From Mobula hypostoma (lineage: Eukaryota), in contig NC_086106.1 of assembly GCF_963921235.1 (NCBI RefSeq), positions 36,704,001 to 36,768,000 on the forward strand: a stretch of 64,000 nt of DNA, in the 5' to 3' direction. The position numbers and the translations under genes are program-made. Under the pieces are notes generated by a model, which saw nothing but the letters and a program-made list of their open reading frames with translations, was not told the origin of the DNA and did not search any database. Below, piece after piece: positions 22,254 through 63,631 of this stretch (within the stretch, counting starts at the first letter, position 1; every line of letters starts with the position of its first letter).

Positions 22254-23170
22254 GTAATCTAACGACAATTGTGATCCTGTCCCGCGGAAGATGCGGTCTT
22301 TCTAGATGTATTACTCGATACTTGGTGGGGATGGCAGTGACGGATCTCCTGGTTCTTATCATAGCGGTTATATTAAACCGGATGAGTGTCATTTACCTCC
22401 CGGTATTTTTCCACTCCATCACACCTGTGTGTAGCCTAAAAATAGCTCTGATATACGCCGCTAGAGATAGCTCAGTTTGGTTAACGGTCGCTTTCACCTT
22501 TGATCGCTTTGTAGCGATTTGCTGCCAGAACTGGAAAACAAAACATCGCACGGAGAGAATGGCACGTATGGTTATCGCAGCCGTCTGTGCTGTGAGCTGT
22601 GTGAAAAACATACCATGGTACTTTGTTTATGAACCTTTATATATAATTGACGGTGACCCGTGGTTCTGCAACATTAAATCAAGTTTTTATTCGGAACTAT
22701 TCTGGGCAGCTTTTGATTGGATTGACCGCATTTTAAACCCCTGTGCCCCATTCCTCGTGATGTTGTTACTCAATGCATTGACTGTCAGAAACATTCTCGT
22801 GGCGAACAGAGCCCGCCGGAGACTCCGGGTCCAGAATACTGGAGACAGGCAAAACGATCCGGAGATGGAGAGCCGAAGAAAGTCAATCGTTTTACTCTTC
22901 ACCATCTCTGGAAGTTTTTTGGTATTATGGACACTGTATGTCGTACATTTCTTTCACGTGAGATTTACAATCAATAGTTATTCGACAGACTCGAATCTCA
23001 ACGACCCCTGGTTTATTCTTCAAGAAACAGGAAATATGTCGCAGCTTCTGAGCTGCTGCACAAACACTTGTATTTACGCGGGTACTCAAACGAAATTCAG
23101 AGAGGAATTCATAAATGGTTTGAAATATCCGTTGATTCGAATTAGGAAACAGCTGAGATCACGATCATAG
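22254..23170 (+). pseudogene. GPR139-like GPCR B1: open exon 2, with exon 1 and promoter deleted (probable pseudogene or orphan exon)
   Basis: Intact acceptor and ORF; 14 nt differences from B2 exon 2 by manual alignment. At ~22184 the sequence jumps from the B2-equivalent of ~61743 to ~62647, removing ~0.9 kb that includes the TATA box, exon 1 and donor. Confidence 0.75.
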
Positions 23171-39066: not shown

Positions 39067-41405
39067 TTACGTTATTTTACATATTATATAAAGTGGATAT
39101 TTCACCGCGTTCTTTAACTGCTTTCTGAAACTACTCTGAGTTACCGCGTATATAAAGGTATTAGTACAAGAATTCAATAACAGCACTTTCTCGTAGAATA
39201 AATTTGGGATCGTTGTAGCCGGCAATTTGATTATTAATCGTAAAACGCTTATAAATAAATTGTACAACGTTTGTCATCCACAAGAGGATGAAAGTACCCG
39301 AGATAGTAAACAGTAAAACGATGGATTTCCTCCGGTTGTCGATCTCTGGGTCACCTTGTTTCTCTCCATTGCCATGCACACGAAGCCTCCTGCGAGCTTT
39401 ACTGGCTACTAGGATGTACCTGACGGTCAGAGCATTGAACAGGAGTATCAGAAAGAACGGAGCGAACGGGGTCAAAATACGGTCGAACCAGTCGAATGCT
39501 CTCCACAAGGCAGAAGTATAACGGATTTCCTTCATTCTGCAAAACCAGGGAACATCACTGATCACAAACATAGGTTCGTGTATAAAATACCAGGGTACGC
39601 TTTTCAAACTTCCGAAAACACTAATCGTTCCTATAACCACAACCGCCGTCTTCTCGATGCAGTATTTTGTTTTCAGCTTTTGGCAGCAAATGGCCACAAA
39701 TCGATCAAAAGTGAAAGCGACTGTCAACCAAACGGAGCTGTCCCTGGTTGAATAAATTAAAGCAATGGTGAGACTACATACGGGTGTAATGGATAGAAAG
39801 CTATTCGGGAAATAAATACCGGGAATCCTATTTAATAAAACAGCCGTGATAATAACTAGGAGGTCGGTCGCCGCCATTGAGAGCAGATACTTCGTTATAC
39901 ACCGGGAGAGACCACATCTTCCTTTGCAAAGGATCACAATCGCCATTAAGTTAGCTACAATAAAAGAGAAAGACAGAATAGTATGATGTGGAATAAGCAC
40001 CTCAATGATATAGTGCAATGATAAATATATTACGCAAAGATACAAATATCGGCGATGTAGATTTTGGCGAACGAAAATAAGCGTTTACATTTATAATGAT
40101 ATGCACAAAGATTAAAAGTCTCGATTCTAAATACTTCAATATGGTCAGTTTTCCATGTTCAATAACCTGTCAGTACTCTTCACCCGTACTGTCATTTAAG
40201 GAATTGAGAAATTGCGGGATGGTCGGCTGGATTGCGGAGGGAGAGGACAGACAGAAATTGATTAATGGAATAAAATCAGTCGGATAAACTGTGCTTTACG
40301 TTAATTGCGAGTCACAATTTCTCAACGAACTTCCATACGATACAAAATATAAAATGTCATTATTATAACTTGAATTTATTAATATAAAACGAAATTTTCG
40401 TTGTTATTTTGGTTAGATTGTCGCCATCATCGATAAATTGACGTATTACTAAACCCGGGCTATCCATAATTGTTACAACCAATCCCGTTGTGATGAATTC
40501 CAAACCAAATCGATGAAAACAATCATTTCGTTTACTTCCGCAGCTGCTATTGTGATAAAGCTACATTTGGATATAACCTTCAAAAATGATGCTGAGAGAC
40601 ATTCAGAAACAAAGCGACAGCGCGCAAGACATTCTTCAAGAAAATATTTTTAAGAGCGTCGCAGATCTTCCCCGTGACTAAGTTGGTTTCCTCCCGGTGC
40701 TCCAATTTTCAAAAACATGCAGGTTAGTGGATTAATGGGGTATTTTAACTTGCCTCTATTCTGTCGCTAAATACCCTTTCCATTTCATTTTCCCACTCAG
40801 ACCCGATGTGCATTGCATATAGTACGACCCAATTCACAGCGCGTCTCTATATATTTAAAAGTGCATTGACATGCTACTTTACATTTCGCCCAATTCGTAA
40901 TCACAAGTAGGAAGAAAAAGATCCCGTGACTGGAATTATCAAAATATTTTCAGAACAATAAGTAAAATTATAAGCATTTCAACATAGCTTAAAGTAGAAA
41001 CTGCTTTGATTGCCAAAATGTTGTTTTTCTTCTCGTCTCTATGTTGTTGGATGAGTTCGGACAGAATCTGCCGGACACTTACGCAGGCAAAATTGCAGAT
41101 ATATTTTAAACGATTATTATGAGGTCTATGAACTGGCCCCTTTCCTTCCCACTGCGTCTTATCTCCGCGTTCACTTCGTGAAAGTAAATCAAGTCAATTA
41201 ATACTGAGGTACAAATAACAATTCGCGTCATCCATAAACGCAGCCACCAAACAACGGAATCTGGAAGGAGCCAAACAATGGACTCTGGAATAAAGAGTAT
41301 TCAGTACGGAGTAATATCCTGCTGAAAAGTTTCACCTGGAATAGCGCAAACTGCAAGGGCAGTGTAATAAACAGCGTACACTGGCCCTCTCGGCGGGGCG
41401 TGCAT
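39067..41405 (-). pseudogene. GPR139-like GPCR A2 (exon 1 41405-41336, exon 2 39954-39067), frameshifted in TM7
   Basis: Both exons and splice sites are present. Exon 2 is 888 nt versus 899 in A1 and A3: an 11-nt deletion at ~39181 gives ...ESAVIEFLY* and loses NTFIY and helix 8. The TATA box is changed to TATATGAC. Confidence 0.82.
40665..40760 (+). mobile_element. V-SINE (HE1-like) remnant in the intron of the A genes (paralog ~57830-57915)
   Basis: cccgtgact...ggtttcctcccggtgctcc...caggttagtggattaat resembles the V-domain. Confidence 0.5.
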
Positions 41406-41799
41406 CTGTGCGAGCGAGTCTGTTCGGAATCGCACATACATTCAATCTAATTGACATTCACACGATCCGTCATATACATTTATAGTGGATAAGTCCACCT
41501 ACCGAGCACAATTCCTGACAAGTACAATTAGAAAATAGCTTAATTTATCCATTAAAGTCTTCCAAACATCTGAGTACACTTTTGTTATTTATATTCATTG
41601 AACAAAGATAGTATAGCAATTAATCTGAGTTTCAATTTCCATGCATAAAAATGTATCAAACTGAATAACATGCTCATTTAAAAGGATATTCACAAATGTC
41701 TGACTATCTATCTATGTATATCTATATGCAGTACGTCCTCGTTATCCTTACCAAGATTTATCACTTTGCATTGAAAGTACATTGAATTTCACTCATCAC

Positions 41800-42232
41800 T
41801 CCTACTTTTTTTCCAAATTAAGAGTGGTTCTATGGATCCTTCGGTTAAATTTGAAAAAACTTGGAGGCCATTTATTCAATATTTTCTTATGATGTAAGTT
41901 GACCCTTTCTGAATCCTTTGTAGTAATTTTTGTGTTCATGTATAGAGGAGCGGAGTTAACGACAATTAATAATTTTAGCCGATGTAATATGACAGCCCAA
42001 GCTCTCCTTTTTTTAGTTTACTTTTTCTTTAGTTTAGGGTGTTTTCTTTTTTCTCTTTATAAAATATCTTTTCCATGATTAGTTACTTGAGATTGGGAGG
42101 CTGAACTATATTTGTTACTTGGAATCTATGCTTGTTCATATTAACTGTTATTATTGTAACCCCGATCTCTATGTACCATTACTATTATTGTTATGTTTAA
42201 TTTTGAAACTTAGTAAAAAGATTGAAAAGAAA
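41800..42232 (+). mobile_element. L1/Tx1-clade LINE 3' end with a 16-bp TSD
   Basis: TSD GAATTTCACTCATCAC at 41784-41799 and 42233-42248; ORF2 end KFEKTWRPFIQYFLMM*; A-rich tail; empty site at ~58896. Confidence 0.8.
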
Positions 42233-43328
42233 GAATTTCACTCATCACACAATACCGTCCACATTCAATTGAAGTCTCACTTCTCCCCGCTCTTTAGCAT
42301 AATTTCAACTTTTGCCACATCTGCATAGTTTCAAGTGTTTCCGTCTACATTCATGTTCTAAAGTCATCTTTGGGAAAGCAATACTTTACCATTGACCGCT
42401 GGGAAACATGGCTTGACATTTCTCGTATATCAAGGCAACCTTCGCTTCGTTGCTCTAAAATGTCACTGGCAGGGTTTATGTTGACTAGACCTGAGATATT
42501 TCATGCTTTGCTGGAGCTTCTGCATGACGGTAACTAGATTTGGTAGTCATTATCTGATGCTGCCTATTTTATCTGAACACATGGTAGAGAAGAGAAACCC
42601 ATATAATGCAATGGGCGTCTATCTTCGACGCGAATCCAATTCTGCATTTTCTTATCACAATCCAGTGGCGTATAACTTTTCCAAAAATCTTGTCCAGGTT
42701 TCCCTTTGACGCATCTTCGAGATAATGCAAATCCGTTGTCTATCTAGTCTAATTAGTTCTAACCAGTGTTTCGAAACTAGGATATAACAGGTGCAGTTGA
42801 TCATGCGTAATGTTTTACGTCATGTTACAGACAATGTTTGCACCAAAAAATTAATATTTCATGGCGTGGCAATTAGTTCAGATTGCACAAATGTGTTATC
42901 CATGTGGAAAGAAACAGAAGCAACAGTGTCACGTTTCTTCACAAAGTGTGCTGCCATGTTGCGGCCGCCCGCCAGCACAGAACGAATGATATGTCTGTCC
43001 AGATATAGCGGGCGTACGTGAACAAAGTTACCTGGAGCGCAACTGAAGTCTTTGCTATATATATAACTCCCTTTCTCTTGAGGTTAGAAATATGAGGTCG
43101 TCTTTTAACGAAAAGGGGCCTTGACAGAGTAGATACAGAGCTAATCTTTCCACTTGTGGGGATAAGCCTGAGCAAAGGGCACCAATATAAAGCAGTCAGC
43201 AAGAAATCAACACAAGGAGTGGTGTGAATCTCAGCCTTATTAACGTGGCGCCTTGCCAAACGCTTAAGGGACAAGTATTGCGTTAATGCAAAGAGATGAG
43301 AAAGTCAGCATGAGGCTTGAATATATGA

Positions 43329-43574
43329 TATCCATGGAGAGGTTGTAACGTGGATTCGAAACTGGTTGTTATCCATGGACAGGTTGTAAACTGGATTAGA
43401 AATTGGCTGTTATCCATGGAGAGGTTGTACACTGGATTCGAAATTGGCTGTTATCCATGGACAGGTTGTAAACTGGATTCGAAATTGGCTGTTATCCATG
43501 GACAGATTGTAAACTGGATTCGAAATTGGCTGTTATCCATGGAGAGGTTGTAAACTGGATTCGAAATTGGCTGT
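43329..43574 (+). repeat. Six 41-bp tandem repeats derived from CR1 RT sequence
   Basis: Unit tatccatgga(g/c)aggttgtaaactggattcgaaattggctgt at 43329, 43370, 43411, 43452, 43493 and 43534. Confidence 0.92.
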
Positions 43575-44049
43575 GTGAGAGCAGACAGAGTGTGGTAGTG
43601 GATGATTGCTTCTCAGACTGGAGGCCTGTGACTAGTTGTGTGCCTCAGGGATCTGTGCTGGGACCATTGTTGTTTGTTGTCTATCAATGATCTAGATGAT
43701 AATGTGGTGAATTGGATCAGCAAGTTTGCTGATAACACTAAGATCAGAGGCGTTGTGGACAGCGAGGAGGGCTTTCAAAGCTTGCAGAGGGATCTGGACC
43801 AACTGGAAAAATGGGACAGAAAATGGCAGATGGAATTAAATGCAGGCAAGTGTGGGGTGTTGCATTTTGGAAGGACAAATCAAAACACAGTAGGACATAC
43901 ACAGTAAATGGTGGAAAACTGAGGAGTGCGGAGGAACAAAGGGATCTGGGATTTCAGATACAAAGTTCCCTGAAAGTGGCGTCACAGGTAGACAAGGTTG
44001 TAAAGAAGACTTTTGGCATCCTGGCATTCATAAATCAAAGTATTGAGTA
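43534..44049 (+). mobile_element. CR1 RT fragment
   Basis: VVNWIRNWL...VPQGSVLGP...KFADNTK...QMELNAGKC; truncated at 44049. Confidence 0.85.
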
Positions 44050-44990
44050 TGTCATGATATCCGAATTCTGGTTGACGGTCCGGCTCATCGATCCTTATTT
44101 CGGGTTTTCCTGTTTTCCCTTGTTCCATTGGGTGCATTAATTGAGGCGTTTGATTCTCGTTTTGGGCTGGTACTTAAATACCTCTGCAAACAAAGGATTC
44201 CCTGCTAGACTGTTCCCTTCCCCTCCCTTCCGAATCCCCGATGGTTACCTCGCCTGCAACCTTCGTCTGCCACTTCGTCAAGTATCCTCGGCAAGTATCT
44301 TCTGCAGTTACTTGGACAGTTACCTCGGCAAATATCCTCGGCAGTCATCCCGGCCCTGCGTCCTAAAGAGGGTTCCGGCCCTGCGTTCTGGAAAGCACCC
44401 CGGCCCTGCGTTCTGGAAAGCACCCCGGCCCTGCGTCCTATAAAGGCCTCGGTGTCTCCGAGCCCAAGCAGGAATCCCGGATCCGTACCCTAGTGCCTAA
44501 CTTAGCCAAGTCCAAGAGCCGAGCCAAATCTAGTTCAAGAGCCACGTCCTGCCCTGGAGTTTCCTCGTCCTGTGCTGGAGTTCCTCGTCCTGTACAGGAG
44601 TTCCCTCCCCCAGCCCTGGAGTTCCCTCGCCCAGCCCAGGAGTACCTCGCCCAGCCTGGTGCTCAAGTTCCCTCGTCCTGTCCAGTAGTTCCCTCGTCCT
44701 GTCCAGGAGTTCCCTCGTCCTGTCCAGGAGTTCCATCGTCCTGTCCAGGTGTTTCTCGTCCTGTCCAGGAGTCCCTTGTCTAGTCCATACCACGTCCAAG
44801 AACCTCGTCTAGTCCAAGCCTAGTTCAAGAACCTCGATATGTCCAAGTCAAGGCTTTGTGTTCTCGTCCTGTCCATATGCCTCCTCCTATGCAGGAGTTC
44901 CACGTCCAGTTCTGTAGCCTAGCCACGTCCAGTCCTGCAGCCACGTCTTGTCCTCGCCTAGATCCGGGGTCCGAGCCCGTCAAGACCCAG
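44050..44990 (+). mobile_element. LTR-like fragment containing 25-bp and 21-bp tandem repeats
   Basis: Starts TGTCATGA; 25-bp ccggccctgcgttctggaaagcacc repeat at 44350-44440; ~21-bp ggagttccctcgtcctgtcca repeat at 44556-44770; no 3' terminus. Confidence 0.5.
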
Positions 44991-45244
44991 GATTCAAGGA
45001 TAAAAGGTGGTAACATTTCCATGGGTGCAGAATATGCGGGAGATGTCCTCAACGAATCCTTTGCTTTGGTATTTTCCAAGGAGAAGGATATAGATGGTAG
45101 AGAGATCAGTGTCGAGAGTAATAATATGCGATGTAAATGAGGAGTTCTCGATGGGTCCCTTAAAGAGCATTAGGGTATGTAAGTCTCCAGTCCATTATAT
45201 AGATATATAGCCCAGGTTATTGAGAGAGGGAAGAGAAGTAATTG

Positions 45245-48200
45245 ACAATGGCCAATAGACAACAGACAATAGGTTCAGGAGTAGGCCATTCGGCCCTTCC
45301 AGTCAGCACCGCCATTCACTGTGATCATGGCTGATCATCCACTATCAGTATCAAGTTCCTGCCTTATCCCCATAACCTTTGATTCCTCTATCTTTAAGAG
45401 CTATATTCATCTCTTTTTTGAAAGCATCCAGAGACTTCGCCTCCACAGCCTTCTGGGGCAGAGCATTCCATATATCCACCACTCTCTGGGGGGTGAAAAA
45501 GTTTTTCCTCAACTCCGTTCTAAATGGCCTACCCCTTATTCTTAAAATGTGGCCTCTGGTTCTGGACTCACCCATCAGCGGGAACATGCTTCCTGCCTGC
45601 AGTGTGTCCAATCCCTTAATAATCTTATATGTTTCAATAAGATCCCCTCTCAGCCTTCTAAATTCCAGAGTATACAGGCCCAGTCGCTCCAATCTTTCGA
45701 CATATGACAGTCCCGCCATCCCGGGAATTAACCTTGTGAACCTATGCTGCACTCCCTCAATAGCAAGAATGTCCTTCCTCAAATTTGGAGACCAAAACTG
45801 CACACAGTACTCCAGGTGTTGTCTCACCAGGACCCTGTACAGCTGCAGAAGGACCTCTTTGCTCTTATACTCAATTCCGCTTGTTATGAATGCTAGCATG
45901 CCATTAGATTTCTTCATTGCCTGCTGTACTTGCATGCTTGCTTTCAGTGACTGATGTACAAGAACACCTAGATCTCGTTGTGCTTCCCCTTTTCCTAACT
46001 TGACTCCATTTAGATAATAATCTGCCTCCCTGTTCTTACCACCAAAGTGGATAACCATCTGCCCACTCAGCCAGCCTGTCCTCATAACATTCTCTTCACA
46101 TTTCACACAGCCACCCAGCTTTGTGTCATCGGCAAATTTGCTAATGTTACTTTTAATTCCCTCATCTAAATCATTAATATATATTGTAAACAGCTGCGGT
46201 CCCCAGAACTGAACCCTGCGGTACCCCACTGGTCACCGCTTGCCATTCTGAAAGGGACCCATTAATCACTACACTTTGTTTTCTGTAAGCCAGCCAATTT
46301 TCAATCCATGTCAGTACTCTACCCCCAATACCATGTGCTCTATTTTTGCCCACTAATCACCTATGTGGGACTTTATCTAAGGCTTTCTGAAAGTCCAGGT
46401 GCACTACATCCACTGGCTCTCCCTTGTCCATTTTCATAGTTATATCCTCAAAATATTCCAGAAGATTAGTCAAGCACGATTTCCCCTTCGTAAATCCATG
46501 CTGACTCGGACCAATCCTGTTACTACTATCCAGATGTGTCGTAATTTCATCTTTTATAATTGATTCCAGCATCGTTCCCACCAGCGACATCAGGCTAACC
46601 GGTCTATAATTCCTTGTTTTCTCTCTTCCTCCCTTCTTGAAGAGAGGAACAACATTAGCCACCCTCCAATCCACAGAAACTGATCCTGAATCTATAGAAC
46701 ATTGGAAAATGATTACCAATGCGTCCACGATGTCTAAAGCCACCTCCTTAAGTACCCTGGGATGCAGGGTATCAGGTCCCGGGGACTTATCATCCTTCAG
46801 ACCCAACAGCCTATCCAACACCATTTCCTGCCTAAAATAAATTTCCTTCAATTCATCCATTACCCTAGGTCCTTTGGCCACTATTACATCTGGGGGATTG
46901 TTTGTGTCTTCTCTAGTGAAGACAGTTCCAAAGTACCTGTTCAACTCGTCTGCCATTTCATTGTTCCCCATAATAAATTCACCCGCTTCTGTCTTCAAGG
47001 GCCCAATTTTGGTCTGAACTATTTTTTCCCTTTTCACATACCTAAAGAAGCTTTTACTATCCTCCTTTATATTCTTGGCTAGTTTACGGGCGTACCTCAG
47101 TTTTTCTCCGCGTATTGCCTTTCTAGTTACCTTCTGTCGCTCTTTAAAATCTTCCTAATCCTCCGGCTTCCCACTCGTCTTTGCTATGTTGTACTTCTTC
47201 TCTTTTATTTTTATACTGTCCATTACTTCCCTTGTCAGCCACGGCCTCCCCTTACTCCCCTTAGGATCTTTCTTCCTCTTTGGAATGAACTGATCCTGCA
47301 CCTTCCACATTATTCCCAGAAACACTTGCCATTGCTGTTCCACTGTCATCCCTGCTAGGGTAATGTTCCATTGAACTTTAGTCAGCTACTCCCTCATAGC
47401 ACCATAGTTCCCTTTGTTCAACTGTAATACTGACACTTCCGAGTTTCCCTTCTCCCTCTCAAATTGTAGATTAAAACTTATCATATTATGGTCACTACTT
47501 CCTAATGGCTCCTTTACCTCGAGGTCCCTGATCAAATCCGGTTCATTGCACAACACTAGATCTAGAATTGCGTTCTCTCTGGTCGGCTTCAGTACAAGCT
47601 GTTCTTAGAATCCATCTCGGAGGGACTCCACAAACTCCCTTTCTTGGGGTCCAGTATCAACCTGATTCCTTGAGTCTACCTGCATGTTGAAAACCCCCAT
47701 AACAACTGTAGCATTACCTTTGCGACATGCCAATTTTAACTCTTGATTCAACTTATACCCTACATCCAGACTACTGTTTGGCGGCCTGTAGATAACTCCC
47801 ATTAAGGTCTTTCTACCCTTAGAATTTCTCAGTTCTATCCATACTGACTCTACGTCTCCTGATTCCATGTCCTCCCTCGCAAGGGACTGAATATCATTCC
47901 TCACCAACAGAACCACCCAACTCCCTCTGCCCATCAGTCTGTCCTTTCGATAGGACGTATACCCGTGAATATTCATTTCCCAGGCCCTGTCCACTTGAAG
48001 CCATGTCTCTGTTATTCCCAGAACATCGTACTTACCAATTTCCAACTGTGCCTCAAGCACATCCACTTTATTTCTTATACTCCGTGCATCCATATACAAT
48101 ACTTGTAATGCATTACTCCCCTCACCTCCCATATCAGTTCCTATTTCACTTGGCCATACTGTACAATCCCTTCTTGAGCTTTCTGCTCTGTTGATTCTGC

Positions 48201-49023
48201 TGTCTTTCTTAACTTTTCTTATTCTCACTTTCCCTTTATCTCCATCCTTATGTTTCCAGTTCGTCCGCTCCCTCCCCCCACCCACTACTTAGTTTAAACA
48301 CACCCGTGTTGCAGAGGCAAACCTGCCTGCCAGAATGCTGGTGCCCCGCTAATTAAGGTGCAACCCATCCCTTTTGTACAATTCATCCTTACCCCGAAAC
48401 ATACCCCAGTGGTCCAGGAATGTAAATCCTTGCTTCCTGCACCAGTTCCTCAGCCACACATTGAGATCCATTATCTCCATGTTCTTGACCACTCCAGCAC
48501 GGGGAACCGGATGTTCACTTTCACTTTTGAGGATTCCCAGCAATCGGTCCGTGACATCCTGGATCCCAGCACCAGGAAAGCAACACACCATCCTTAAATC
48601 TCGCCTGTTGCCACAGAAACCCCTTTCTGTACCTCTCACTATGCAGTCCCCTCCTACCACGGTTCTGCCTGGCGTCTGTCTCCTCGGCTTTGCCTCAGCA
48701 CCAATTGTTGACTCGCAGACCCGTCCGTCTCTCAGACTGGCAGTGTCTTCTGTCCCGACAGCTTCCAAAAGTGACAACCTGTTTACGAGAGGCACATCTC
48801 CCGGGGTCTCCTGTACTTCAAGCATCCTTTCCTTGCTCATCGTCGTCCTCCTTCTCTCTTCCTGTATCCTGGGTGTAACGATCACACTGTAGGTCCTGTC
48901 CAGAAAACTCTCGTTCTCCCGGATTAACCTAACGTCGTCCAGTTGCCTCTCCAGTGCTGCAACACGGTCCTTCAGAAGCTGAATCTGGACGCATTTTCCG
49001 CAGGTATAGGATCCAGAGGAACT
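45245..49023 (-). mobile_element. Near-full-length CR1 LINE (ORF1 plus EN/RT ORF2, several frameshifts)
   Basis: ORF1 (YTCGKC, GDCIVRG), EN (LYMDARSIRNK, GITETWL, IYRPP), RT; tail at 45245-45270; TSD ATTG; empty site at ~12398. Confidence 0.92.
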
Positions 49024-49199
49024 ATTGCTGGAGCCTCGACTAACATCTGAGTGGTAGCACAAGAAAAAGCAGTGATTTCATTTACTTCCAAGGCTGAAGT
49101 GTAAAAAGGCAGCACCTCGCGGCAGTTGTCATAGTTAGATTGTGCCGAATCAGTGAACGGATTCATTTGAAAGGTTGAATAAAGATAGGCAGGGGCAAG

Positions 49200-52100
49200 C
49201 GGAGCGGCCATTGTGCGAATAGGCCAGTGTTGGAGTGACTCTGTTTCATCAGGCTTAGACGACGTAAATAGCTGATAAGTTTCTTGTTCTTCCTCTGTAT
49301 TCTTCGTTCTTCATTTCTTAAGGCACAGTTAGTGCAGTAAGAATGACTGTAGCAGCCGTGATTTGTTTAGCGTGAGACGTGGGGATGGTGGGAGATGTCT
49401 GGTCTCCCAGTAAACCACATCTGCACTAGGTGCACCAAGCTGTAGCACCTCAGCAAACGTGTTAAGGAACTGCAGCTGCAGCTTGATAACCTTCGGCTCC
49501 TATGGCAAACCGAGGGAGTGAAAGATAAGATCTGGAAGGAGGTAGTAACTTCTAGGTTGCAAGAAACATGTAACTTGATGACTTCAGGAGAAGCAAGGGA
49601 AATATGTAACCAGTGCAAAGTACTCCTGTGTCTGTAACCCTCAATAATAAGTATACTACTTTGGATATTGTTGAGAGGACGACCTGCCGGGGAGAGCGGC
49701 AGCAATTGTGTCTCTGGTGCTGAGTGTGGAACTCTGGCTCAGAAGAGTAGAGAGGTGAAGAGAACTGCAGTAATGATAGGAGATTCCATGGTCAGTGAAA
49801 TACAGAAAATATTCTGTGGATGTGATCGAGACAGCCGGATAGTCTGTTGGCTTCCAGGTGCCAGGGTCATTGATTTCGCGGATCGGGTCCAAAGGTGGTG
49901 GGGGGTGGGGGGGCGGAGGATGACGGCGGAGTGAGCAGCCAGAATCCTTGGTACACGTTGGCATTAATGACATAGGTAAGAAAGGTGAGGGAGTCCTAAT
50001 GAGAGATTTGAAGGAGCAAGGTAAAAAGCTAAAAAGCAGGACATCCAGGGTAGTAATCTCTAGATTGCTGTCTGTGCCCATTGAGTTCAGAATACAATGA
50101 TTTGGCAGATGAATGCTGAGGAACCGGTGCAGGGGCGTGAGTTCAGAGTTATGGATCATTGGCATCTCTTTAGGAGTAGATACAACCTGTGCGAAAGGGA
50201 TGTGTTTCATCTGAATCCGAGGGAGACCAGTATCCTTTCTGGCAGGTTTGCTCGAGCTGTCGGGAGAGTTTAAACTAATTTTGCGGGAGGATAGTAGCGG
50301 GAGTGTTAGAATTGAGGATGGGGTAGTTGGATTACAAATAGAAGCAGAGTGTAGTGAATATGCTAGAAAGGAGAGGCTAATGATAGAGCAAAAACGCAGT
50401 GAACAAGAGAAGTTGCAATATAAAAGGGGGTCAAAACCGAAAAGGGCGACGACTACAGGACTAAATGTGATATATCTGAATGCACGGAGTATACCAAATA
50501 GGGAACACCATCTTGTAGCCCAGTTACAGACAGGCTTGTGTGATGTTGTGGGCAGCACTGAATCGTGGCTGATAGAAAATTATAGCTGACAGTTTAACGT
50601 CCACCAATGCATACTTTATCGATAGGACAGACAATACGAGGAGGAAGCGCGGTGGGTCTGTTGGTTAAAAAAAAATCAAATTAAGAGAAAGAGATGGTAT
50701 AAGATCAGATGGGGTATAATTGCTAGGAAAATGTAATTGTAAAAAGATCCTGATGGGAATTATATACAGACTTCCAAACAACAGTAACGATGTGGCTACA
50801 AGTTACTACGGAGATAGAAAATGCATCTGAAAAGAGCAATGTTACAATAGCCATGGGGGATTTGAATATGCTGGTAAATTGTGTGTGTTGGGGGGGGGGA
50901 TGAAGATGACGCCAGTGAAGAATGTAACCAAGGGCGAAATCCTCCAGGCGATGCAAATAACTTTCTTCAGTTCTTTCATATCTTTTTCGGCTTTCAAGGT
51001 TGCTTCTGCTACTGTGGAATCCGTGATCTACATTTTGGTGGCTGAATGGACGATGTGGCACCTTGCAGTCTCCGAGTGTGTTCCGTGAGGTTTCGGGTGA
51101 AGTGTGCGGACAGGAATCCAAGAACCCTGGAGAGAGCGCGCAATCTCTTGATTGACTCCATTTCTCTCGGATCCATCTGATTAAAGCGTCGAGAAGATCT
51201 GAAGTAAAAGAAGCGAGAGTGGTCGGCGAGCGAGTATTCTGCGCTGTCTACCAGCCTCTCGGTCTCTGCTGGTGGCGGATGGTGTCTAGGTGTGACAGTC
51301 TCTGCTTCCCTCTCGCTTGCTGCTCCCGCAGGAAGATGTCTGCGTTCGAGTGGTCTCTTTCTCCCTCGATGCTGTCAGAGGATGCTGCCTGAGTTCTGGT
51401 CTTGGACAAGGTTTAATCGGTGCAGTTTATGGATTGGACACTGGTTCGTGATGTGATGCGTTTCTGGTTTCTGGGCACTCATGTTTTGTTGTTGTTCTTC
51501 TTCTGTGCGATTTTGATTAAGGCAGCCTGTGGCCTGTGGCCTGCAGTGTATTGAGCTGGGCCGAACTGAGTAGAATGTGCTTGTGCTCCTTCGATTACCT
51601 TTTTGAGTTGTTGGGTTATGTAAGGTGTTATCCCTTGTCTGTTTTTTTGCCGTTTGTATTATATTTTTGAACGTTTGGTATTGGCGCTATTATTTGAACC
51701 AGTTCCATGTATTTTCTTTCACATTTTTTCGTGACTGTCTGTGGGAAGACGAATCTCAAGGTTGTATACCGCTTACATACTTTGATAATAAATGTACCTT
51801 GAATCCTTGAATCAAGATGGTACTGAATCCCAGGAGAGGAGATTTTATAGAACGCCGACAATATGTCGTTTCAGAGCAATTCATGGTTGAGCCCACATGG
51901 GGACCAGCTATTCTGGATTGAGTGTTGCGCAATGAACTGGAATTGAATAGAGAGCTTAAGCTAAAGGAAGCCTTTGGGGACAGTGATCTTAATATGAAGG
52001 AATTCACCCTGCAATTTCAGAAGGAGAAGCCAAAGTCAGAAGTATCATTATTAGGGGGGAGTAAGAAGGAATTACAGAGGCATGAGAGAGGAGTTGACCA

Positions 52101-55100
52101 GGATTTACTGGACCGGAAAATTATCAAGGGCTGACAGCAGAGCAGCAATGTCTGGAATTTCTGGGAAGGTTTAATTAGATTCATCCCAACAAAGAAGTAT
52201 TCTAAATGCAGGATGACATAACTGTGGATGCCAAGAGAAGTCAAAGCCAGCATAAAGGCTGAAGAGTGGCATATAATAGAGCAAAAAATACTGTAAATTA
52301 GAGGATTGGGAATCTTTTAAAAACCAACAGTAGGCTACTGAAAATGTCATAAAGATGGAAAAGATGGAATACGAAAATAAGATAGCCAATAACGTTAACA
52401 GAGATTCCAAACGTTTCTGCATATGTATAAAATGTAAAGACGAGGAAAGAGTAGATATTGAACCACTGAAAACTGATGCTGAAGAGGTAGCAATGGGGAA
52501 GTAAGAAATGGCAGCCTAACTGAAAAAGTATTTTTCATCAGTCTCCACTGTGGAAGACACCAGCAGCATGTTGGAAGGTCAGTGGTGTCAGGCGTCAGAG
52601 GTGTGTGAAGTTGCCATTACTAGGGAACTGAAAGGACTGAAGGTAGATAAGTCACCTGGACCGGATGGTCTACATCCTAGTGTTCTGAAAGAGGTAGATG
52701 AAGATATTGTGGAGGCAATAGTAATGATCCTTCAAGAATCAATGGATTCAAGCATGGTTCCAGAGTACTAGAAAAATGCGAGTGTCACTTCACTCCACCC
52801 TTTAGTAAAAGAGAGGAACAGAAGGCCTTTGATAACGTGCCACACGTGAGGCTGCTTGTCAAGTTAAAAGCCCATAGTATTACAGGAAAGATTCTGGTAT
52901 GGATTGCGCATTGGCTGATAGACAGGAGGCAACGAGTGGAAATAAAGGCAGCCTTTTCTGGTTGCCTGCCAATGACCAGTGGTGTTCCACGGGGGTCTTC
53001 GTTGGGACCACTTTTTATGTTTTACGACAATGATTTGGACAACGGAATTGATGGTTTGTGGCCGTGTCTATAGACGATAAAGGATAGGTGGAGGAGTAGG
53101 TAGATTTCAGGAAGCACAGCCGCTGCAGAAGGAATTAGATGGATAAGGAGAATGGACAATTAAATGACAGGTGGAATGCAGCGTCGGTAAATGAGTAATC
53201 ATTCACTTTGGTAGAAGGACTTCTGTACGGCCTTTGACAAGGTTCCACACGGAAGGTTAGTTAGGAAGGTTCAATCGTTAGGCATTAATATCGAAGTAGT
53301 AAAATGGATTCAGCAGTGGCTGGATGAGAGACGCCAGAGAGTAATGGTGGATAACAGTGTGTCAGATTGGAGGACGGTGTCTAATGGTGTGCCTCAGGGA
53401 TCTGTACTGGGTCCAATGTTGTTTGTCATATATATTAATGGTCTGGATGATGGGGTGGTATATTGGATTAGTAAGTATGCAGATGAAACTAAGCTAGGTG
53501 GAGTTGTGGATAATGAAATAGGTTTTCAAAGCTTGCAGAGACATTTAGACCACTAAGAAGAGTCGGCTGAAAGATGGCAGGTGGAGTTTAATACTGATAA
53601 ATGTGAGGTGCTACATTGTGGTAGGACTAATCAATATAGGAAATGCGTGGTAAATGGTAGGGCATTGAAGAATGCAGTAGAACAGAGGGATCTAGGAATA
53701 ATGGTGCATAGTTCCCTGAAGGTGGAATCTCATGTGGATAGGGTGGTGAAGAAAGCTTTTGGTATGCTGGCGTTTATAAATCAGAGCATTGAGTATAGGA
53801 GTTGGGATGTAATGTTGAAATTGTATAAGGCATTGGTAAGGCCAAATTTGGAGTATTATGTTCAGTTCTGGTCACTGAATTATAGGAAAGATGTCAATAA
53901 AATTAAGAGGATACAGAGGAGATTTACTAGAATGTTGCCCGGGTTTCATCTCCTAAGTTACAGAGAAAGGTTAAACGTGTTAGGTCTTTATTTCTTGGAG
54001 CATAGAAGGTTGAGGGGGGACTTGATAGAGGTATTTAAAATTATAAGGGGGGATAGATAGAGTTGACGTGGATAGGCTTTTTCCATTGAGAGTGGGGGAG
54101 ATTCAAACAAGAGGACAGGAGTTGAGCGTTAAAGGGCAAAAGTTTAGGGGTAACATGAGGGGGAACTTCTTTACTCAGAGAGTGGTAGCTGTGTGGAACG
54201 AGCTTCCAGCAGAAGTGGTTGAGGCAGGTTTGATGCTGTAATTTAAAGTTAAATTGGATAGATGTATGGACAGAAAAGGAATGGAGGGTTATGGGCTGAG
54301 TGCAGGTCGGTGGGACTAGGTGAGAGTGTGTGTTCGGCACGGACTAGAAGGGCCGAGATGCCCTGTTTCCGTGCTGTAATTGTTATATGGTTATGGTTAA
54401 GGAATAAAAGTGTGTACTAACTTCTAAATTGAGAGAAACTTCACAAATCTGAAGCGCAAATGGACCTGGGGAGGGGTCCTCGTGCAGGATTCCCTAAAGG
54501 TTAATTTGCAGCTTCATTCAGTGGTGAGAAAGCCAAATATGATGTTAGCATTCATTTCAAAATGACTCGAATATAAAAGCAAGAATGTAATGTTGGAGGC
54601 TTTATAAGGCATAGATGTGGCCTCACTTGGAGTATTGCGAGCAGTTTTGGGCCCCTTATTGAAGAAGCGATGTGCTGACATTGGAAAGCGTTTGAAGGAG
54701 ACTCACGAAAATGATTCCGGGATTGAAAAGCTTATCTGAGAAGCGTTTGATTGCTCTAAACCTCTACTCACTGGAATTCAGCAAAATTGGAGGGCTGGCG
54801 GTGAATCTCTTTGACACCTATCGAACGTCGAAAGGCCTCCATGAAGTGGATGTAGAAAGTATGTATCGTATGATGGGATACTCTAAAAAAAGTACGACAC
54901 ACCCTTCGAATGGAGAGTCGTCTATTAAGAACGGAGATGAGGAGGAATTCCTTTAGAAAGAGAGTGGTGAATCTGCCGAATTCTTTACACCAATCGCAGT
55001 GAAGATCTGATCATTTGGTACAGGCAGAGGTAGATAGATTGTTGATTAGCCTGGGTACAACTGAATGCTGGAGAAGACAGGGGATCGGAGTAGAGAAGCA

Positions 55101-55110
55101 AATGGAAAAA
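49200..55110 (+). mobile_element. Old CR1, duplicate of 12590-17930
   Basis: Colinear with 12590-17930; lacks the Penelope insertion and carries its own CR1 insertion. Confidence 0.8.
53220..54398 (+). mobile_element. 5'-truncated CR1 nested in the old CR1
   Basis: TSD AAGGA at 53215-53219 and 54399-54403; GVPQGSVLGP, YADET and LVRPNLEY motifs; (TATGGT)n tail; empty site at ~17223. Confidence 0.9.
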
Positions 55111-56205
55111 CTATGATGAAATCTGTTTTCACTGTTGACTGTTCCTTGTTGAAATTTGTTGACACCAAAGAGTCTTTTTGTTGATCAGTGCCTTAAAAAG
55201 TCAAAATAAACCCACTGTGATTCAATGTTGTAAAACAATAAAATATTTATATACTTACAGACAGACAGAGACAGAGACAGAGAGAGGGGAGGCGAGAGAG
55301 AGCGAGAGAGGGATAGACAGAGAGAGAGTAGAAAGAGAGTTGCACATGTTTGTGTATATCGAATAAGTTAGGGTTAGAGACAGTGTCATTTTGAAGGCTA
55401 CCAAGCAAGGGGTGAATTTTTATATACTGTAGTAAGCGCAAAGTGATAACGTGAGAATGGAGAATGGAGACGGAAACAGGGCAGTAAGAGATTGTGCAAA
55501 TGTGGAGACTGATTGGGGGCATTGGGATCAAAAGAAGGATGGGTAGCGAAGAGGGAACAGAAGACAGGGATAGATGTACACGATCACGCAGTACAATGTG
55601 AGTACATTTGTTCTGGGAATTTCCCATTCCCGTTTAGACAATTGTCTCTGCGGCCTCCTGCATTGTTACCACAAAACACAATGCAAGATGAGAAGCGCCA
55701 ACTCCGTCTTCAGCCTGGGATCAGCCTTCCAGATTTAATTTTGAATGCTCCCAGCTCACGCATTCTTGTAAAATTCATCTGAATTTGACATTTCTGCCTG
55801 CCATTAATTTAGTTCTGTTATTTCTTTTCCCCAATCCCGTCTGCTAACCAGGAAACACAATGTGCTTCTAACGGATTTACGGACGGATTTACCTGATCCA
55901 AAGTATTCCCTCGGTTCTACTGTACTCTGCAATGTTTTCTGCTGTTTGACGGTAAATTGCTTTCGTTTTCCTTCGGTTCCGCAGAAGAGTTTCGGAACTG
56001 AAATCCTGATCATCTTTTCGCAGATGCCGGTTTACACGCTGAGTGCTTCCAGTATTTTCTGCTTGTATTAAGCCCCAGCCGAACAAACTCAAAATATTTG
56101 AAATTCAGGTGAATAATAACTGCAGTAATAAAGTTTTTGGCCTTCGAATAGGTGCACAGATGCTTCTGATGAAAAGAATATTCATTCAGATTTAGACTTT
56201 AATTA

Positions 56206-57104
56206 TTACGTTATTTTACATATTATATGAAGCAGATATTTCACCGCGTTCTTTAACTGCTTTCTGAAACTTTTTTGAGTTACCGCGTATATAAAGGTAT
56301 TAGTACAAGAATTCAATAACTGAAGCATAATAGCACTTTCTTGTAGAATAAATTTGGGATCGTTGTAGCCGACAATTTGATAATTATTCGTCAAACGCTT
56401 ATAACAAAATTGTACAACATTTGTCATCCACAGGAGGATGAAACTACCCGAGATAGCGAACAGTAAAACGATGGATTTCCTCCGGTTGTCGATCTCTGGG
56501 TCATCCTCTTTCTCTCCATTGCCATGCACACGAAGCCTCCTGCGAGCTTTACTGGCTACTAGGATGTACCTGACGGTCAGAGCATTGAACAGGAGTATCA
56601 GGAAGAACGGAGTGAACGGGGTCAAAATACGGTCGAACCAGTCGAATGCTCTCCACAAGGCAGAAGTATAACGGATTTCCTTCACACTGCAAAACCAGGG
56701 AACATCATTGATCACAAACATAGGTTCGTGTATAAAATACCAGGGTACGCTTTTCAAACATCCGAAAACACTAATCGTTCCTATAACCACAACCGCCGTC
56801 TTCTCGGTGCAGTATTTTGTTTTCAGCTTTTGGCAGCAAATGGCCACAAATCGATCAAAAGTGAAAGCGACTGTCAACCAAACGGAGCTGTCTTTGGACA
56901 TAGAAATTAAAGCAATGGAGAGACTGCATACGGGTGTAATGGACAGAAAGCTATTCGGGAAATAAATACCAGGAATCCTATTTAATAAAACAGCCGTGAT
57001 AATAACTAGGAGATCCGTCGCCGCCATTGAGACCAGATACTTCGTTATACACCGGGAGAGACCACATCTTCCTTTGCAAAGGATCACAATCGCCATTAAG
57101 TTAG
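56206..57104 (-). CDS. Exon 2 of intact GPR139/GPR142-like class A GPCR A3 (322 aa spliced)
   Basis: Acceptor ...ttttttgtAG|CT AAC TTA ATG; uninterrupted ORF. 7TM motifs: AN in TM1, MAATDLL in TM2, SVWLTVAFTFDRFVAICC in TM3, ECL2 Cys (PWFC), LNSCTNTFIY in TM7. These resemble GPR139/142 motifs. Confidence 0.92.
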
Positions 57105-58445: not shown

Positions 58446-58515
58446 CTGGAATAGCGCATACTGCAAGGGCAGTGTAATAAACAGCGTACACTGGCCCTCT
58501 CGGCGGGGCGTGCAT
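58446..58515 (-). CDS. Exon 1 of intact GPR139/GPR142-like GPCR A3 (MHAPPRGPVYAVYYTALAVCAIP + 1 nt)
   Basis: ATG at 58515; 70 nt ending CCA G|GTGAAA (phase-1 donor); hydrophobic TM1 start; TATATAAA ~64 nt upstream; joins in frame to exon 2 (G|CT = Ala, then N-L-M-A-I-V). Confidence 0.88.
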
Positions 58516-58578
58516 CTGTGCGAGCGAGTCTGTTTGGAATCGCACATACAATCAATCTCATTGACAGTCACACGATCC

Positions 58579-62048: not shown

Positions 62049-62051
<3 letters not shown>

Positions 62052-62099: not shown

Positions 62100-62101
<2 letters not shown>

Positions 62102-62441: not shown

Positions 62442-62511
62442 ATGCATGGGCAAACAAAGGGCCTCGCGTATGCGATTTTCTACCCACTTCTGGCAGTTCT
62501 AGGTGTTCCAG
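62442..62511 (+). CDS. Exon 1 of intact GPR139/GPR142-like GPCR B2 (MHGQTKGLAYAIFYPLLAVLGVP + 1 nt)
   Basis: gaccATG at 62442; 70 nt ending CCA G|GTAAAT; TATATAAA at 62362; a 203-nt intron leads to the in-frame acceptor at 62713-62714. Confidence 0.9.
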
Positions 62512-62714
62512 GTAAATGATACATTGCGCAGACAGTTCTGCGCTCCTCTTGAATTTGGCAGAAAATATCTGTACGTTCCAGTCAGCTGCTTCCTATGCTT
62601 TACATGAGCCTTCCACATCTGTTGAAGGTTCAGGAGCTTCGTGTATTTTTCTGTTTTGTACAGATGCAGCAACATCTAAAATTAGTAATATCGACGTTTC
62701 TTTCTTTTAAATAG

Positions 62715-63631
62715 GTAATCTAACGACAATTGTGATCCTGTCCCGCGGAAGATGCAGTCTTTCTAGATGTATTACTCGATACTTGGTGGGGATGGCAGTG
62801 ACGGATCTCCTGGTTCTTATCATAGCGGTTATATTAAACCGGATGAGTGTCATTTACCTCCCGGTATTTTTCCTCTCCACCACTCCGGTGTGTAGCCTAA
62901 AAATAGCTCTGATATACGCCGCTAGAGATAGCTCAGTTTGGTTAACGGTCGCTTTCACCTTTGATCGCTTTGTAGCGATTTGTTGCCAGAACTGGAAAAC
63001 AAAATATTGCACGGAGAGAATGGCACGTATGGTTATCGCAGCCGTCTGTGCTGTGAGCTGTGTGAAAAACATACCATGGTACTTTGTTTATGAACCTTTA
63101 TATATAATTGACGGTGACCCGTGGTTCTGCAACATTAAATCAAGTTTTTATTCGGAACTATTCTGGGCAGCTTTTGATTGGATTGACCGCATTTTAAACC
63201 CCTGTGCCCCATTCCTCGTGATGTTGTTACTCAATGCATTGACTGTCAGAAACATTCTCGTGGCGAACAGAGCCCGCCGGAGACTCCGGGTCCAGAATAC
63301 TGGAGACAGGCAAAACGATCCGGAGATGGAAAGCCGAAGAAAGTCAATCGTTTTACTCTTCACCATCTCTGGAAGTTTTTTGGTATTATGGACCCTGTAT
63401 GTTGTACATTTCTTTCACGTGAGATTTACAAACAATAGTTATTCGACAGGCTCGAATCTCAACGACCCCTGGTTTATTCTTCAAGAAACAGGAAATATGT
63501 CGCAGCTTCTGAGCTGCTGCACAAACACTTGTATTTACGCGGGTACTCAAACGAAATTCAGAGAGGAATTCATAAATGGTTTGAAATATCCGTTGATTCG
63601 AATTAGGAAACAGGTGAGATCACGATCATAG
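62715..63631 (+). CDS. Exon 2 of intact GPR139/GPR142-like class A GPCR B2 (328 aa spliced)
   Basis: Acceptor tttcttttaaatAG|GT AAT CTA (G|GT = Gly, GNLTTIV); open to TAG at 63629-63631; motifs AVTDLL, TFDRFVAICC, PWFC, SCCTNTCIY. Confidence 0.92.

What the first reader, a model, noticed from the sequence alone, without database searches (positions are those of the whole stretch)
39067..57104. Paralog variation concentrates in ligand-facing segments and is mosaic
TM3 top: SIALISMSKDS (A1, A3), TIALIYSTRDS (A2), KIALIYAARDS (B). ECL2: FLVNDVPWY*KE (A1), FVISDVPWFCRM (A2), FVINDVPWFCSV (A3). TM6/ECL3: FCNKRFTNNY (A1), FIYKRFTINN (A2), FCYKRLTNNY (A3). TM1-TM2 and TM5-ICL3 are nearly identical. 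A3 groups with A1 in TM3 and TM6 but with A2 in ECL2 and the C-terminus. Half of the B1/B2 changes also fall in ECL1 and ECL3. Inference: diversifying selection on the binding pocket plus patchwise exchange.
Basis: partly seen in the sequence, partly recalled or inferred. Interest (0 to 1): 0.7.

Follow-up and report, generated by a model that had tools for sequence, protein, structure and literature searches.

The report
Patchy divergence among ray GPR139-like receptor copies
Five neighbouring copies of an orphan receptor gene in a devil ray differ in short patches; three copies are broken, exchange between copies is supported, and selection on the ligand pocket is not shown.

Summary
The window is Mobula hypostoma DNA. 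It holds five copies of a two-exon, GPR139-like class A receptor: A1, A2, A3, B1 and B2.

**Observation.** Every quoted peptide is correct. Amino-acid differences among A1-A3 are clustered (p=0.00015; p=0.003 after weighting by family-wide variability).
- The "ligand-facing" claim is only partly true. The outer half is enriched 2.3-fold (p=0.03). Canonical pocket positions are not enriched (p=0.19). The cytoplasmic tail is as variable as ECL2.
- Only A3 and B2 look intact. A1 has a stop codon and no exon 1, A2 has an 11-nt frameshift, and B1 has no exon 1.

**Selection.** Diversifying selection is not shown. Trio dN/dS is 0.4-0.7 and is not distinguishable from 1. M1a against M2a gives p=0.07, or 0.16 without the TM3 patch.

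**Mosaic.** With three sequences it only lists private changes, and polarised sites fit one tree. Independent tests do support exchange:
- lineage-specific runs of changes (p=0.0009);
- non-coding flanks with different histories (p=4e-8);
- a clear B1-B2 conversion tract.

No donor for the patches was found.

The scan noted this receptor family before on other DNA of this genome (s1-142126, s1-142441). The behaviour is ordinary birth-and-death plus gene conversion, in a family I found in no paper I could search.

The parts
56206..57104 (-). A3 exon 2 (TM1 end to stop codon). This is the intact A copy and is identical to M. hypostoma XP_062915852.1 (P0121).
   Evidence: ORF; identity to P0121 asserted; keeps all 35 family-invariant residues; AG acceptor.
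58446..58515 (-). A3 exon 1 (MHAPPRGPVYAVYYTALAVCAIP plus 1 nt), followed by a GT donor.
39067..39954 (-). A2 exon 2. An 11-nt deletion at about 39181/39182, before TM7, shifts the frame. The truncated product equals XP_062917383.1 (P0124). The M. birostris ortholog P0123 is intact.
41336..41405 (-). A2 exon 1 with a GT donor.
19005..19903 (-). A1 exon 2, a pseudogene. TGC>TGA at the ECL2 disulfide cysteine (C162*, about 19488-19490). No exon 1 is found anywhere in the A1-B1 spacer.
   Evidence: The module alignment lacks the counterpart of 57538-60274.
22254..23170 (+). B1 exon 2. The reading frame is open but there is no exon 1, and the family-invariant C122 is replaced by R. It sits inside a 0-3% diverged tract shared with B2 (about 22200-23400).
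62715..63631 (+). B2 exon 2, the intact B copy.
62442..62514 (+). B2 exon 1 (MHGQTKGLAYAIFYPLLAVLGVP plus a split codon), followed by a GT donor.
56890..56907 (-). TM3 patch in A3, identical in A1 at 19689-19706. ATTTCTATGTCCAAAGAC encodes I-S-M-S-K-D at positions 3.32-3.37. A2 has ATTTATTCAACCAGGGAC (I-Y-S-T-R-D) at 39740-39757. Seven nucleotide differences fall within 12 nt.
   Evidence: The A1/A3 state is derived, because A2, A4, B and the family consensus carry Y3.33 and R3.36.
19478..19541 (-). ECL2 patch private to A1 (residues 148-164): 7 amino-acid changes plus the stop codon, with 3 of A1's 8 private synonymous changes.
55263..55964 (-). Distal 3' flank of A3, matching A1 18052-18763 and A2 38146-38837. 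Here A1-A3 are 3-9% diverged and A2 is 12-20% from both. In the intron all pairs are about 12%.

Best explanation
This is a young segmentally duplicated cluster of an elasmobranch GPR139-like orphan class A receptor, evolving by birth-and-death. A head-to-head A/B module was duplicated into A1-B1 and A3-B2, and there is a further A copy, A2. A1, A2 and B1 are now broken.

**Shown.**
- The amino-acid differences among the A copies sit in a few short, lineage-private patches. These are TM3 3.28-3.36, the ECL2 hairpin tip, TM6 top/ECL3, TM7 top, and also cytoplasmic ICL3 and the C-tail.
- Average constraint is weak (dN/dS 0.4-0.7).
- Exchange between paralogs has occurred in this cluster. This rests on the B1-B2 tract and on the discordant histories of the A flanks.

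**Inferred.**
- The densest patches are tract-like, multi-nucleotide events. They are probably short gene conversions from other members of this very large family, or complex mutations.
- These events are overlaid on relaxed constraint in loops and tails, and on decay in the pseudogenes.
- Some older patches probably changed ligand specificity. They replace residues that are strongly conserved in the family pocket, and the A2-lineage states are retained in the M. birostris ortholog. Positive selection is neither needed nor demonstrated.
For: **Gene status.**
- Exon 1 exists only for A2, A3 and B2.
- A1 carries C162* and A2 an 11-nt deletion.
- A1 and B1 each lose a family-invariant cysteine. 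A3 and B2 keep all 35 invariant residues.

**Clustering beyond the constraint landscape.**
- Overall p=0.0027 with entropy weighting.
- All four codons 91-94 hit: p=0.00045. At least 7 of 11 codons in ECL2 hit: p=0.00015. These two windows were chosen post hoc.

**Tract-like nature.**
- Seven nucleotide changes in 12 nt at TM3, including TCA>ATG.
- A1's private synonymous changes co-cluster with its ECL2 patch: 3 of 8 fall in 17 codons, against about 0.46 expected by my own Poisson arithmetic on the counts.
- Lineage labels run in blocks (p=0.0009).

**Exchange.**
- Non-coding heterogeneity between flank segments, p=4e-8, and a breakpoint at p<0.0005.
- B1-B2 are 0-3% diverged across exon 2 plus about 250 nt of 3' flank, against 9-18% around it.
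- Synonymous divergence for A2 pairs is 0.073, against 12-15% in their flanks.

**Weak constraint.** dN/dS values are. The variable sites coincide with family-wide high-entropy sites (1.48 against 0.85 bits, p=1e-6).

**Functional hint.**
- Of the 12 old A2-versus-A1/A3 codon differences shared with the M. birostris A2 ortholog, 11 lie in the extracellular half. Of the 4 changes found only in M. hypostoma A2, none do.
- A1/A3 carry S3.33 and K3.36 where the family has Y in 70 of 89 and R in 79 of 89 sequences.
Against: - No donor sequence for the SMSK patch or for the A1 ECL2 patch was found among 124 family proteins or in the window. Conversion from outside the trio is therefore inferred, not shown.
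- Within exon 2 no conflicting shared-derived sites exist. Exchange among the three A exons themselves is not proven.
- The second breakpoint, near the C-tail, is not significant (p=0.13).
- M2a point estimates do put about 26% of sites at dN/dS near 3, at p=0.07. Episodic positive selection could produce lineage-private patches just as well.
- Windows and topology classes were partly chosen after seeing the data.
- Only three close sequences were available.
Confidence: 0.6

Rival explanations
1. Diversifying positive selection on the ligand pocket drives the patches, and each paralog is being tuned to a different ligand.
For: - The extracellular half is enriched (odds ratio 2.26, p=0.03).
- The patches hit generic pocket positions 3.28, 3.33, 3.36, 45.51/45.52, 7.35 and 7.39.
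- Local dN/dS is about 4 in the TM3 and ECL2 windows.
- M2a places a site class at dN/dS near 3.
- Old A2-lineage differences are 11 of 12 extracellular and are conserved in M. birostris.
Against: - The likelihood-ratio tests are not significant (p=0.074, 0.16, 0.24).
- Whole-gene dN/dS is below 1 and indistinguishable from 1.
- Canonical pocket positions are not enriched (p=0.19).
- The cytoplasmic tail is as variable as ECL2.
- A3, the only intact A copy, has 7 of its 10 private changes on the cytoplasmic side.
- The strongest window belongs to pseudogene A1 and includes its stop codon.
- Triple-nucleotide codon changes and co-clustered synonymous changes are not what site-wise selection predicts.
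Confidence: 0.2
2. There is only relaxed constraint and pseudogene decay. Independent point mutations accumulate where the protein tolerates them, with no exchange and no selection.
For: - Three of the five copies are broken.
- dN/dS of 0.73 is not different from 1.
- The variable sites are the family's high-entropy sites (p=1e-6).
- The clustering in the C-tail is largely explained by low constraint (p=0.037).
Against: - Clustering survives entropy weighting (p=0.0027).
- The lineage-run test conditions on site positions and is still significant (p=0.0009).
- The TM3 patch lies at family-conserved residues.
- Non-coding flanks have discordant histories (p=4e-8).
- The B1-B2 tract includes non-coding DNA.
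- M1a fits better than M0 (2*delta lnL = 5.0), so many sites are still constrained.
Confidence: 0.15
3. This is an assembly artefact. The patches or the flank discordance come from chimeric assembly of near-identical paralogs.
For: Short-read-style Logan contigs do collapse these paralogs. The X1 contig at 56459-56892 has 2-3 times single-copy depth and reads the A1/A2 state at ICL3.
Against: - Contigs of the same species lie on the A3-specific intron and 3' flank with no differences.
- NCBI gene models of this assembly reproduce A3 and the truncated A2 exactly.
- The M. birostris A2 ortholog carries all the old A2-private states.
- The modules differ by 9-18% in their flanks, which long reads resolve easily.
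Confidence: 0.05

Closest known systems
Human GPR139 (structures 7VUG and 9M42)
   Same: - It is the best solved-structure match by sequence (E=1.4e-9) and, narrowly, by fold (Foldseek rank 1, TM-scores 0.68/0.77).
- NCBI names all family members 'probable GPR139'.
- Both are class A receptors with a very short N-terminus.
   Different: - Identity is only about 20%.
- Peptide receptors such as GPR15, MCHR1, SSTR1 and GALR2 score almost the same in the fold search.
- The GPR139 agonist contacts named in PMC12775434 are E108 3x32, R244 6x51, N271 7x38 and D84 2x61. Here those positions are I, N or Y, A or G, and N.
- GPR139 is a single gene. This family returned more than 120 clusters above 60% identity, all from sharks and rays.
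Tandem chemoreceptor-type GPCR families evolving by birth-and-death, with gene conversion and variable outer faces. Examples from my own knowledge, not tested here: olfactory receptors, TAARs, MRGPRs.
   Same: - A tandem or segmental cluster with pseudogenes (3 of 5 copies).
- Elevated dN/dS.
- Variation enriched in the outer half and the loops.
- Conversion tracts between neighbouring copies.
   Different: - No site with significant dN/dS above 1.
- The deep pocket of the family is strongly conserved, not hypervariable.
- No expression or ligand data exist.
- The gene has two coding exons, with an intron in TM1.
Interlocus gene conversion between segmental duplicates
   Same: - The B1-B2 tract is sharply bounded, covers exon 2 plus non-coding flank, and is 0-3% diverged against 9-18% around it.
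- The three A copies have discordant trees in adjacent segments.
   Different: For the small intra-exon patches no donor is identified. They could equally be complex multi-nucleotide mutations.

Membership tests
Class A (rhodopsin-like) GPCR, Pfam PF00001 | Match to the 7tm_1 profile above Pfam's cut-off. | tested here: met
   A3 scores 70 bits and B2 62.8 bits, against a cut-off of 30.5.
Class A (rhodopsin-like) GPCR, Pfam PF00001 | Seven-helix fold with helix 8, the C3.25-ECL2 cysteine pair, a DRY-type motif and W6.48. | tested here: met
   - The AlphaFold2 model of paralog P0001 has pLDDT 81.6 and pTM 0.81, with 7 TM helices plus H8.
- It matches solved GPCRs at TM-score 0.7-0.8.
- C83, C162, D107-R108-F and W249 are invariant in the family.
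- NPxxY is replaced by N-T-F-I-Y.
GPR139 orthologs | Close sequence relationship to GPR139. | tested here: not met
   E=1.4e-9 and about 20% identity. Other peptide receptors are nearly as close.
GPR139 orthologs | Conservation of the agonist-contact residues E3.32, R6.51, N7.38 and D2.61 (PMC12775434). | tested here: not met
   - 3.32 is I in 60 of 89 sequences.
- 6.51 is Y in 80 of 89, and N in A1-A3.
- 7.38 is A or G.
- 2.61 is N in 86 of 89.
Receptor family under diversifying selection at the ligand pocket | Codon sites or site classes with dN/dS significantly above 1. | tested here: inconclusive
   - M1a against M2a: p=0.074 for the trio, 0.16 without the TM3 patch, 0.24 with five sequences.
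- The window scan is not significant after correction.
- Power is low with three close sequences.
Receptor family under diversifying selection at the ligand pocket | Variable sites enriched at ligand-contact positions. | tested here: inconclusive
   - Extracellular half: odds ratio 2.26, p=0.03.
- Generic pocket list: p=0.19.
- The C-tail is equally variable.
- Pocket lining was assigned by generic numbering, not from coordinates.
Interlocus gene conversion | A tract much less diverged than its surroundings and extending into non-coding DNA. | tested here: met
   B1-B2 at about 22200-23400 are 0-3% diverged, against 9-18% upstream and 13% downstream.
Interlocus gene conversion | Significant change of phylogenetic signal along the alignment. 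| tested here: met
   - Max chi-square 37.0 with permutation p<0.0005.
- Non-coding segments alone: chi-square 40.3, p=4e-8.
- Within exon 2: p=0.013, and runs test p=0.0009.
Interlocus gene conversion | An identifiable donor for the converted patch. | tested here: not met
   No family protein other than A3 itself carries SMSK, and none carries the A1 ECL2 motifs. There is no local template in the window. Only 124 proteins and this window could be searched.
Chemosensory receptor repertoire | Expression in sensory neurons, or known ligands. | not testable with these tools
   No RNA run held the sequence. I found no paper on the family.

The most novel reading that the evidence does not exclude
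The A lineage may be neofunctionalising members of an undescribed, shark-and-ray-specific, chemoreceptor-like repertoire. In this reading the otherwise conserved deep pocket (Y3.33, R3.36, Y6.51, N7.39) was rebuilt in blocks by selected micro-conversions. Cassette-like exchange, and not point mutation, would then be the way this family generates new ligand specificities.
Probability: 0.15. Interest if true: 0.6.

Novelty: new member of a known kind. Interest (0 to 1): 0.33.

Why it matters
- The family is large, appears restricted to sharks and rays, and is absent from the papers I could search. How its copies diverge therefore bears on whether it is a sensory or otherwise ligand-diverse repertoire.
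- This cluster gives a clean small example. Apparent "pocket diversification" among neighbouring copies is confounded by pseudogenes, by multi-nucleotide events and by gene conversion. All three inflate standard tests for positive selection.
- The cluster also flags specific residues for testing: 3.33-3.36, 6.51, 6.56-ECL3, 7.35 and 7.39. Paralog-specific states at the A2-lineage positions are conserved between two Mobula species.
- The process itself (birth-and-death, conversion, variable loops) is textbook for tandem receptor families.

Tried and rejected
1. **Family-wide codon analysis.** DNA for the M. hypostoma and M. birostris paralogs could not be fetched because the sample files were too large, and one look-up was never sent. 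A Heptranchias perlo locus was fetched but held only one copy in 24 kb, at about 75% identity, so synonymous sites would be saturated. I dropped this line.
2. **Donor search for the patches.** Motif searches over 124 family proteins and approximate DNA matches in the window found none.
3. **Read laying.** I first read the A3-private ICL3 change (GAGGAT against CAAGGT, 56504-56508) as polymorphic, because contigs of the same species show the other state. I rejected this. The contig has 2-3 times single-copy depth, and the site is flanked by more than 31 nt identical in all A copies, so paralog collapse is the likelier cause. What I kept: a second species has contigs on A3-specific flanks at 1.4-2.9% divergence, so the paralogs predate that species split.
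4. **A4 as donor of A1's C-terminus.** They share only I312, so this is too weak.
5. **A second breakpoint at the C-tail.** Not significant (p=0.13).
6. **Literature.** Four searches and look-ups in two papers found nothing on this family.
7. **Expression.** No RNA run holds the gene. This is not evidence of silence.
8. **Pocket lining from coordinates.** The model's coordinates are not readable by scripts, so generic residue numbering was used instead.

Full report
**What is there.** The window is vertebrate DNA with LINE reverse-transcriptase remnants between genes.
- A tblastn search with the longest receptor ORF finds five copies of one receptor exon: A1 (19005-19903, minus), A2 (39067-39954, minus), A3 (56206-57104, minus), B1 (22254-23170, plus) and B2 (62715-63631, plus).
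- The products match Pfam 7tm_1. In a 5.8-billion-protein search the listed best 120 hits, all from sharks and rays, are mostly named 'probable GPR139', with a few named otherwise or unnamed. The 120th hit still has E=4e-117.
- The A3 product is letter-for-letter Mobula hypostoma XP_062915852.1. The frameshifted A2 product is XP_062917383.1. The window is therefore M. hypostoma.
- The same 90% cluster holds another paralog, here called A4 (P0001), its M. birostris ortholog (P0122), and an intact M. birostris ortholog of A2 (P0123).

**Gene structure and status.** Full-length relatives start with about 23 residues (MHAPPRGPVYA...) that are missing from the long exon. A stop codon or AG acceptor sits directly upstream of 'NL' in TM1.
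- This short exon 1, followed by a GT donor, exists for A3 (58446-58515), A2 (41336-41405) and B2 (62442-62514). It does not exist for A1 or B1, either by peptide search or by sensitive blastn.
- The A1-B1 spacer lacks the counterparts of 57538-60274 and 61743-62646.
- A1 also has TGC>TGA at the ECL2 disulfide cysteine. A2 has an 11-nt deletion before TM7.
- B1 replaces the family-invariant C122. A3 and B2 keep all 35 invariant residues.
A2's break is recent, because its M. birostris ortholog is intact.

**The observation.** Every quoted peptide is correct. Among A1-A3, 54 of 298 codons vary: 37 in amino acid and 17 only synonymously.
- Amino-acid-variable codons are clustered (p=0.00015). Synonymous ones are not (p=0.86).
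- The clustering survives weighting sites by the entropy of an 89-sequence family alignment (p=0.0027).
- I set topology from an AlphaFold2 model of P0001 (pLDDT 81.6) and from generic numbering anchors. On that basis the extracellular half holds 21/117 variable codons and the intracellular half 16/181 (odds ratio 2.26, p=0.03).
- A generic list of class A pocket positions is not enriched (7/37 against 30/261, p=0.19).
- Helix 8 and the C-tail (7/23) are as variable as ECL2 (7/23) and ECL3 (3/10).
- The variable sites are the family's generally variable sites (1.48 against 0.85 bits, p=1e-6).
- 'Concentrated in short patches' is solid. 'Ligand-facing' is a partial description.

**Selection.**
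- Nei-Gojobori dN/dS is 0.63, 0.43 and 0.58 for the A pairs and 0.38 for B1/B2.
- On the three-branch tree there are 21.7 synonymous and 44.3 non-synonymous changes.
- I wrote a Goldman-Yang maximum-likelihood implementation. M0 gives 0.73, not different from 1 (p=0.26).
- M1a fits better than M0, so many sites are constrained. M2a adds a class at dN/dS near 3, with LRT 5.2, p=0.074. The p-value is 0.16 without codons 91-94 and 0.24 with B1/B2 included.
- Five-codon windows at 161-165, 90-94 and 312-316 reach local dN/dS near 4 at nominal p=0.004-0.01. This is not significant across about 60 windows. One of them is cytoplasmic, and the first is carried by pseudogene A1 and includes its stop codon.
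- Positive selection is neither shown nor excluded.

**The 'mosaic' argument.** With three sequences every variable site groups two against one. 'A3 with A1 here, with A2 there' therefore only says where A2 and A1 carry private changes.
- I polarised sites with B, A4 from two species, the M. birostris A2 ortholog and the family consensus. The only shared-derived group is A1+A3 at the TM3 patch.
- The TM6/ECL3/TM7 states are derived in A2. The ECL2 and C-tail states are derived in A1.
- There is no A2+A3 or A1+A2 shared-derived state.
- One tree, ((A1,A3),A2),A4, fits the protein data apart from I312, which A1 shares with A4.

**Evidence that exchange is nevertheless real.**
- *Lineage runs.* Keeping the variable sites fixed and permuting only which lineage carries each change gives 30 runs among 62 sites (p=0.0009). 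Runs of eight A2/stem changes fall at TM3, nine of ten A1 changes at ECL2, and five A3 changes at ICL3/TM6.
- *Patch composition.* The TM3 patch is 7 nucleotide differences in 12 nt, including TCA against ATG. Three of A1's eight private synonymous changes lie inside its 17-codon ECL2 patch.
- *Flank histories.* In a three-way alignment with flanks, all pairs are about 12% apart in the intron and about 5% apart in the exon. In the distal 3' flank A1-A3 are 3-9% apart while A2 is 12-20% from both.
  - Private-change counts (A1, A2, A3) are 25/21/23 in the intron, 18/8/6 in the proximal 3' flank and 20/82/18 in the distal 3' flank (chi-square 40.3, p=4e-8).
  - The best breakpoint is about 245 nt past the stop codon (A3 55964, A1 18763, A2 38837; p<0.0005).
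- *B1-B2 tract.* B1 and B2 are 0-3% apart from about 22200 to 23400, including about 250 nt of 3' flank. The modules are 9-18% apart upstream and 13% beyond.
- *Synonymous divergence.* For A2 pairs it is 0.073, about half the flank divergence.
- *Limits.* No donor for the small patches was found among 124 proteins or in the window. The second breakpoint is not significant (p=0.13).

**A functional hint.** Twelve A2-versus-A1/A3 codon differences are shared with the M. birostris A2 ortholog, so they predate that species split.
- Eleven of them lie in the extracellular half: 3.28, 3.33-3.36, ECL2 156/163/164, 6.56, ECL3 263/265 and 7.35.
- None of the four changes found only in M. hypostoma A2 (48, 123, 139, 244) lie there. 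By my own arithmetic Fisher p is about 0.003, but several of the eleven may be single events.
- The family's deep pocket is strongly conserved: Y3.33 in 70 of 89, R3.36 in 79, Y6.51 in 80, N7.39 in 77 and E7.36 in 89 of 89.
- A1/A3 carry S3.33 and K3.36. A1-A3 carry N6.51. At 7.39 A1 has C, A3 has I and the M. birostris A2 ortholog has V; the codon is deleted in M. hypostoma A2.
- This fits either a change of specificity or a subfamily sliding into decay. By contrast, A3's own private changes are 7 of 10 cytoplasmic.

**Relation to known things.** GPR139 is the nearest solved structure by sequence (E=1.4e-9) and, narrowly, by fold, at about 20% identity.
- Its agonist contacts E3.32, R6.51, N7.38 and D2.61 (PMC12775434) are not conserved here.
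- These are therefore GPR139-like orphan receptors, not GPR139 orthologs.
- I found no paper on the family.
- Two earlier follow-ups of this scan described the same family on other DNA of this genome (s1-142126, s1-142441).

**Read data.** Only contigs were available.
- Contigs of the same species cover A3's intron and flanks without differences.
- A second species has contigs on the A3-specific intron (8/578) and 3' flank (16/543), so an A3 ortholog exists there.
- An apparent alternative reading of the ICL3 change is probably paralog collapse, and I draw nothing from it.
- No RNA run held the gene.

**Verdict.** The sequences are as described and the patchiness is real.
- The patches are best read as tract-like events (short conversions or complex mutations), combined with weak constraint, in a birth-and-death cluster where three of five copies are broken.
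- Pocket-directed diversifying selection remains unproven.
- This is an ordinary process in an interesting, undescribed family.

Noticed in passing
window 58982-59714, 42333-43060, 3-738, 3527-3925 and 5516-5844: A stretch of about 730 bp lying 0.5-1.6 kb upstream of the A3 and A2 first exons recurs twice more near the window's left end (80-86% identity), with no A gene beside it. It could be a conserved upstream element of further A copies lying left of the window, possibly the A4 gene (P0001), or it could be a repeat.
   Followed up: no
window 36067-37734, 45351-47037, 47605-49062, 53581-54060: LINE-type reverse-transcriptase and endonuclease ORF fragments fill the space between the receptor modules. 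Some are shared between the duplicated modules and others are not.
   Followed up: no
window 56719-56942 (TM3 to DRF region of A3): Contigs of two further species (runs X9 and X10) pile up here to a summed depth near 1000, against 10-100 elsewhere. This suggests the segment is near-identical across very many family copies in those genomes.
   Followed up: no
window 18016-18680 and 55217-55885: In the 3' flank of A1 and A3 there is a stretch of about 650 bp at only 3-6% divergence. The neighbouring stretches on both sides are 10-18% diverged. It is either a conversion tract or a conserved non-coding element such as a 3' UTR.
   Followed up: partly
family alignment A1 (89 proteins), positions 3.36, 3.37, 5.42, 5.46, 7.36: The family keeps a charged network in the deep pocket: R3.36, D3.37, D5.42, R5.46 and an invariant E7.36. 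Variation sits at the pocket entrance. This argues for a shared ligand core or a structural lock, not a fully hypervariable pocket.
   Followed up: partly
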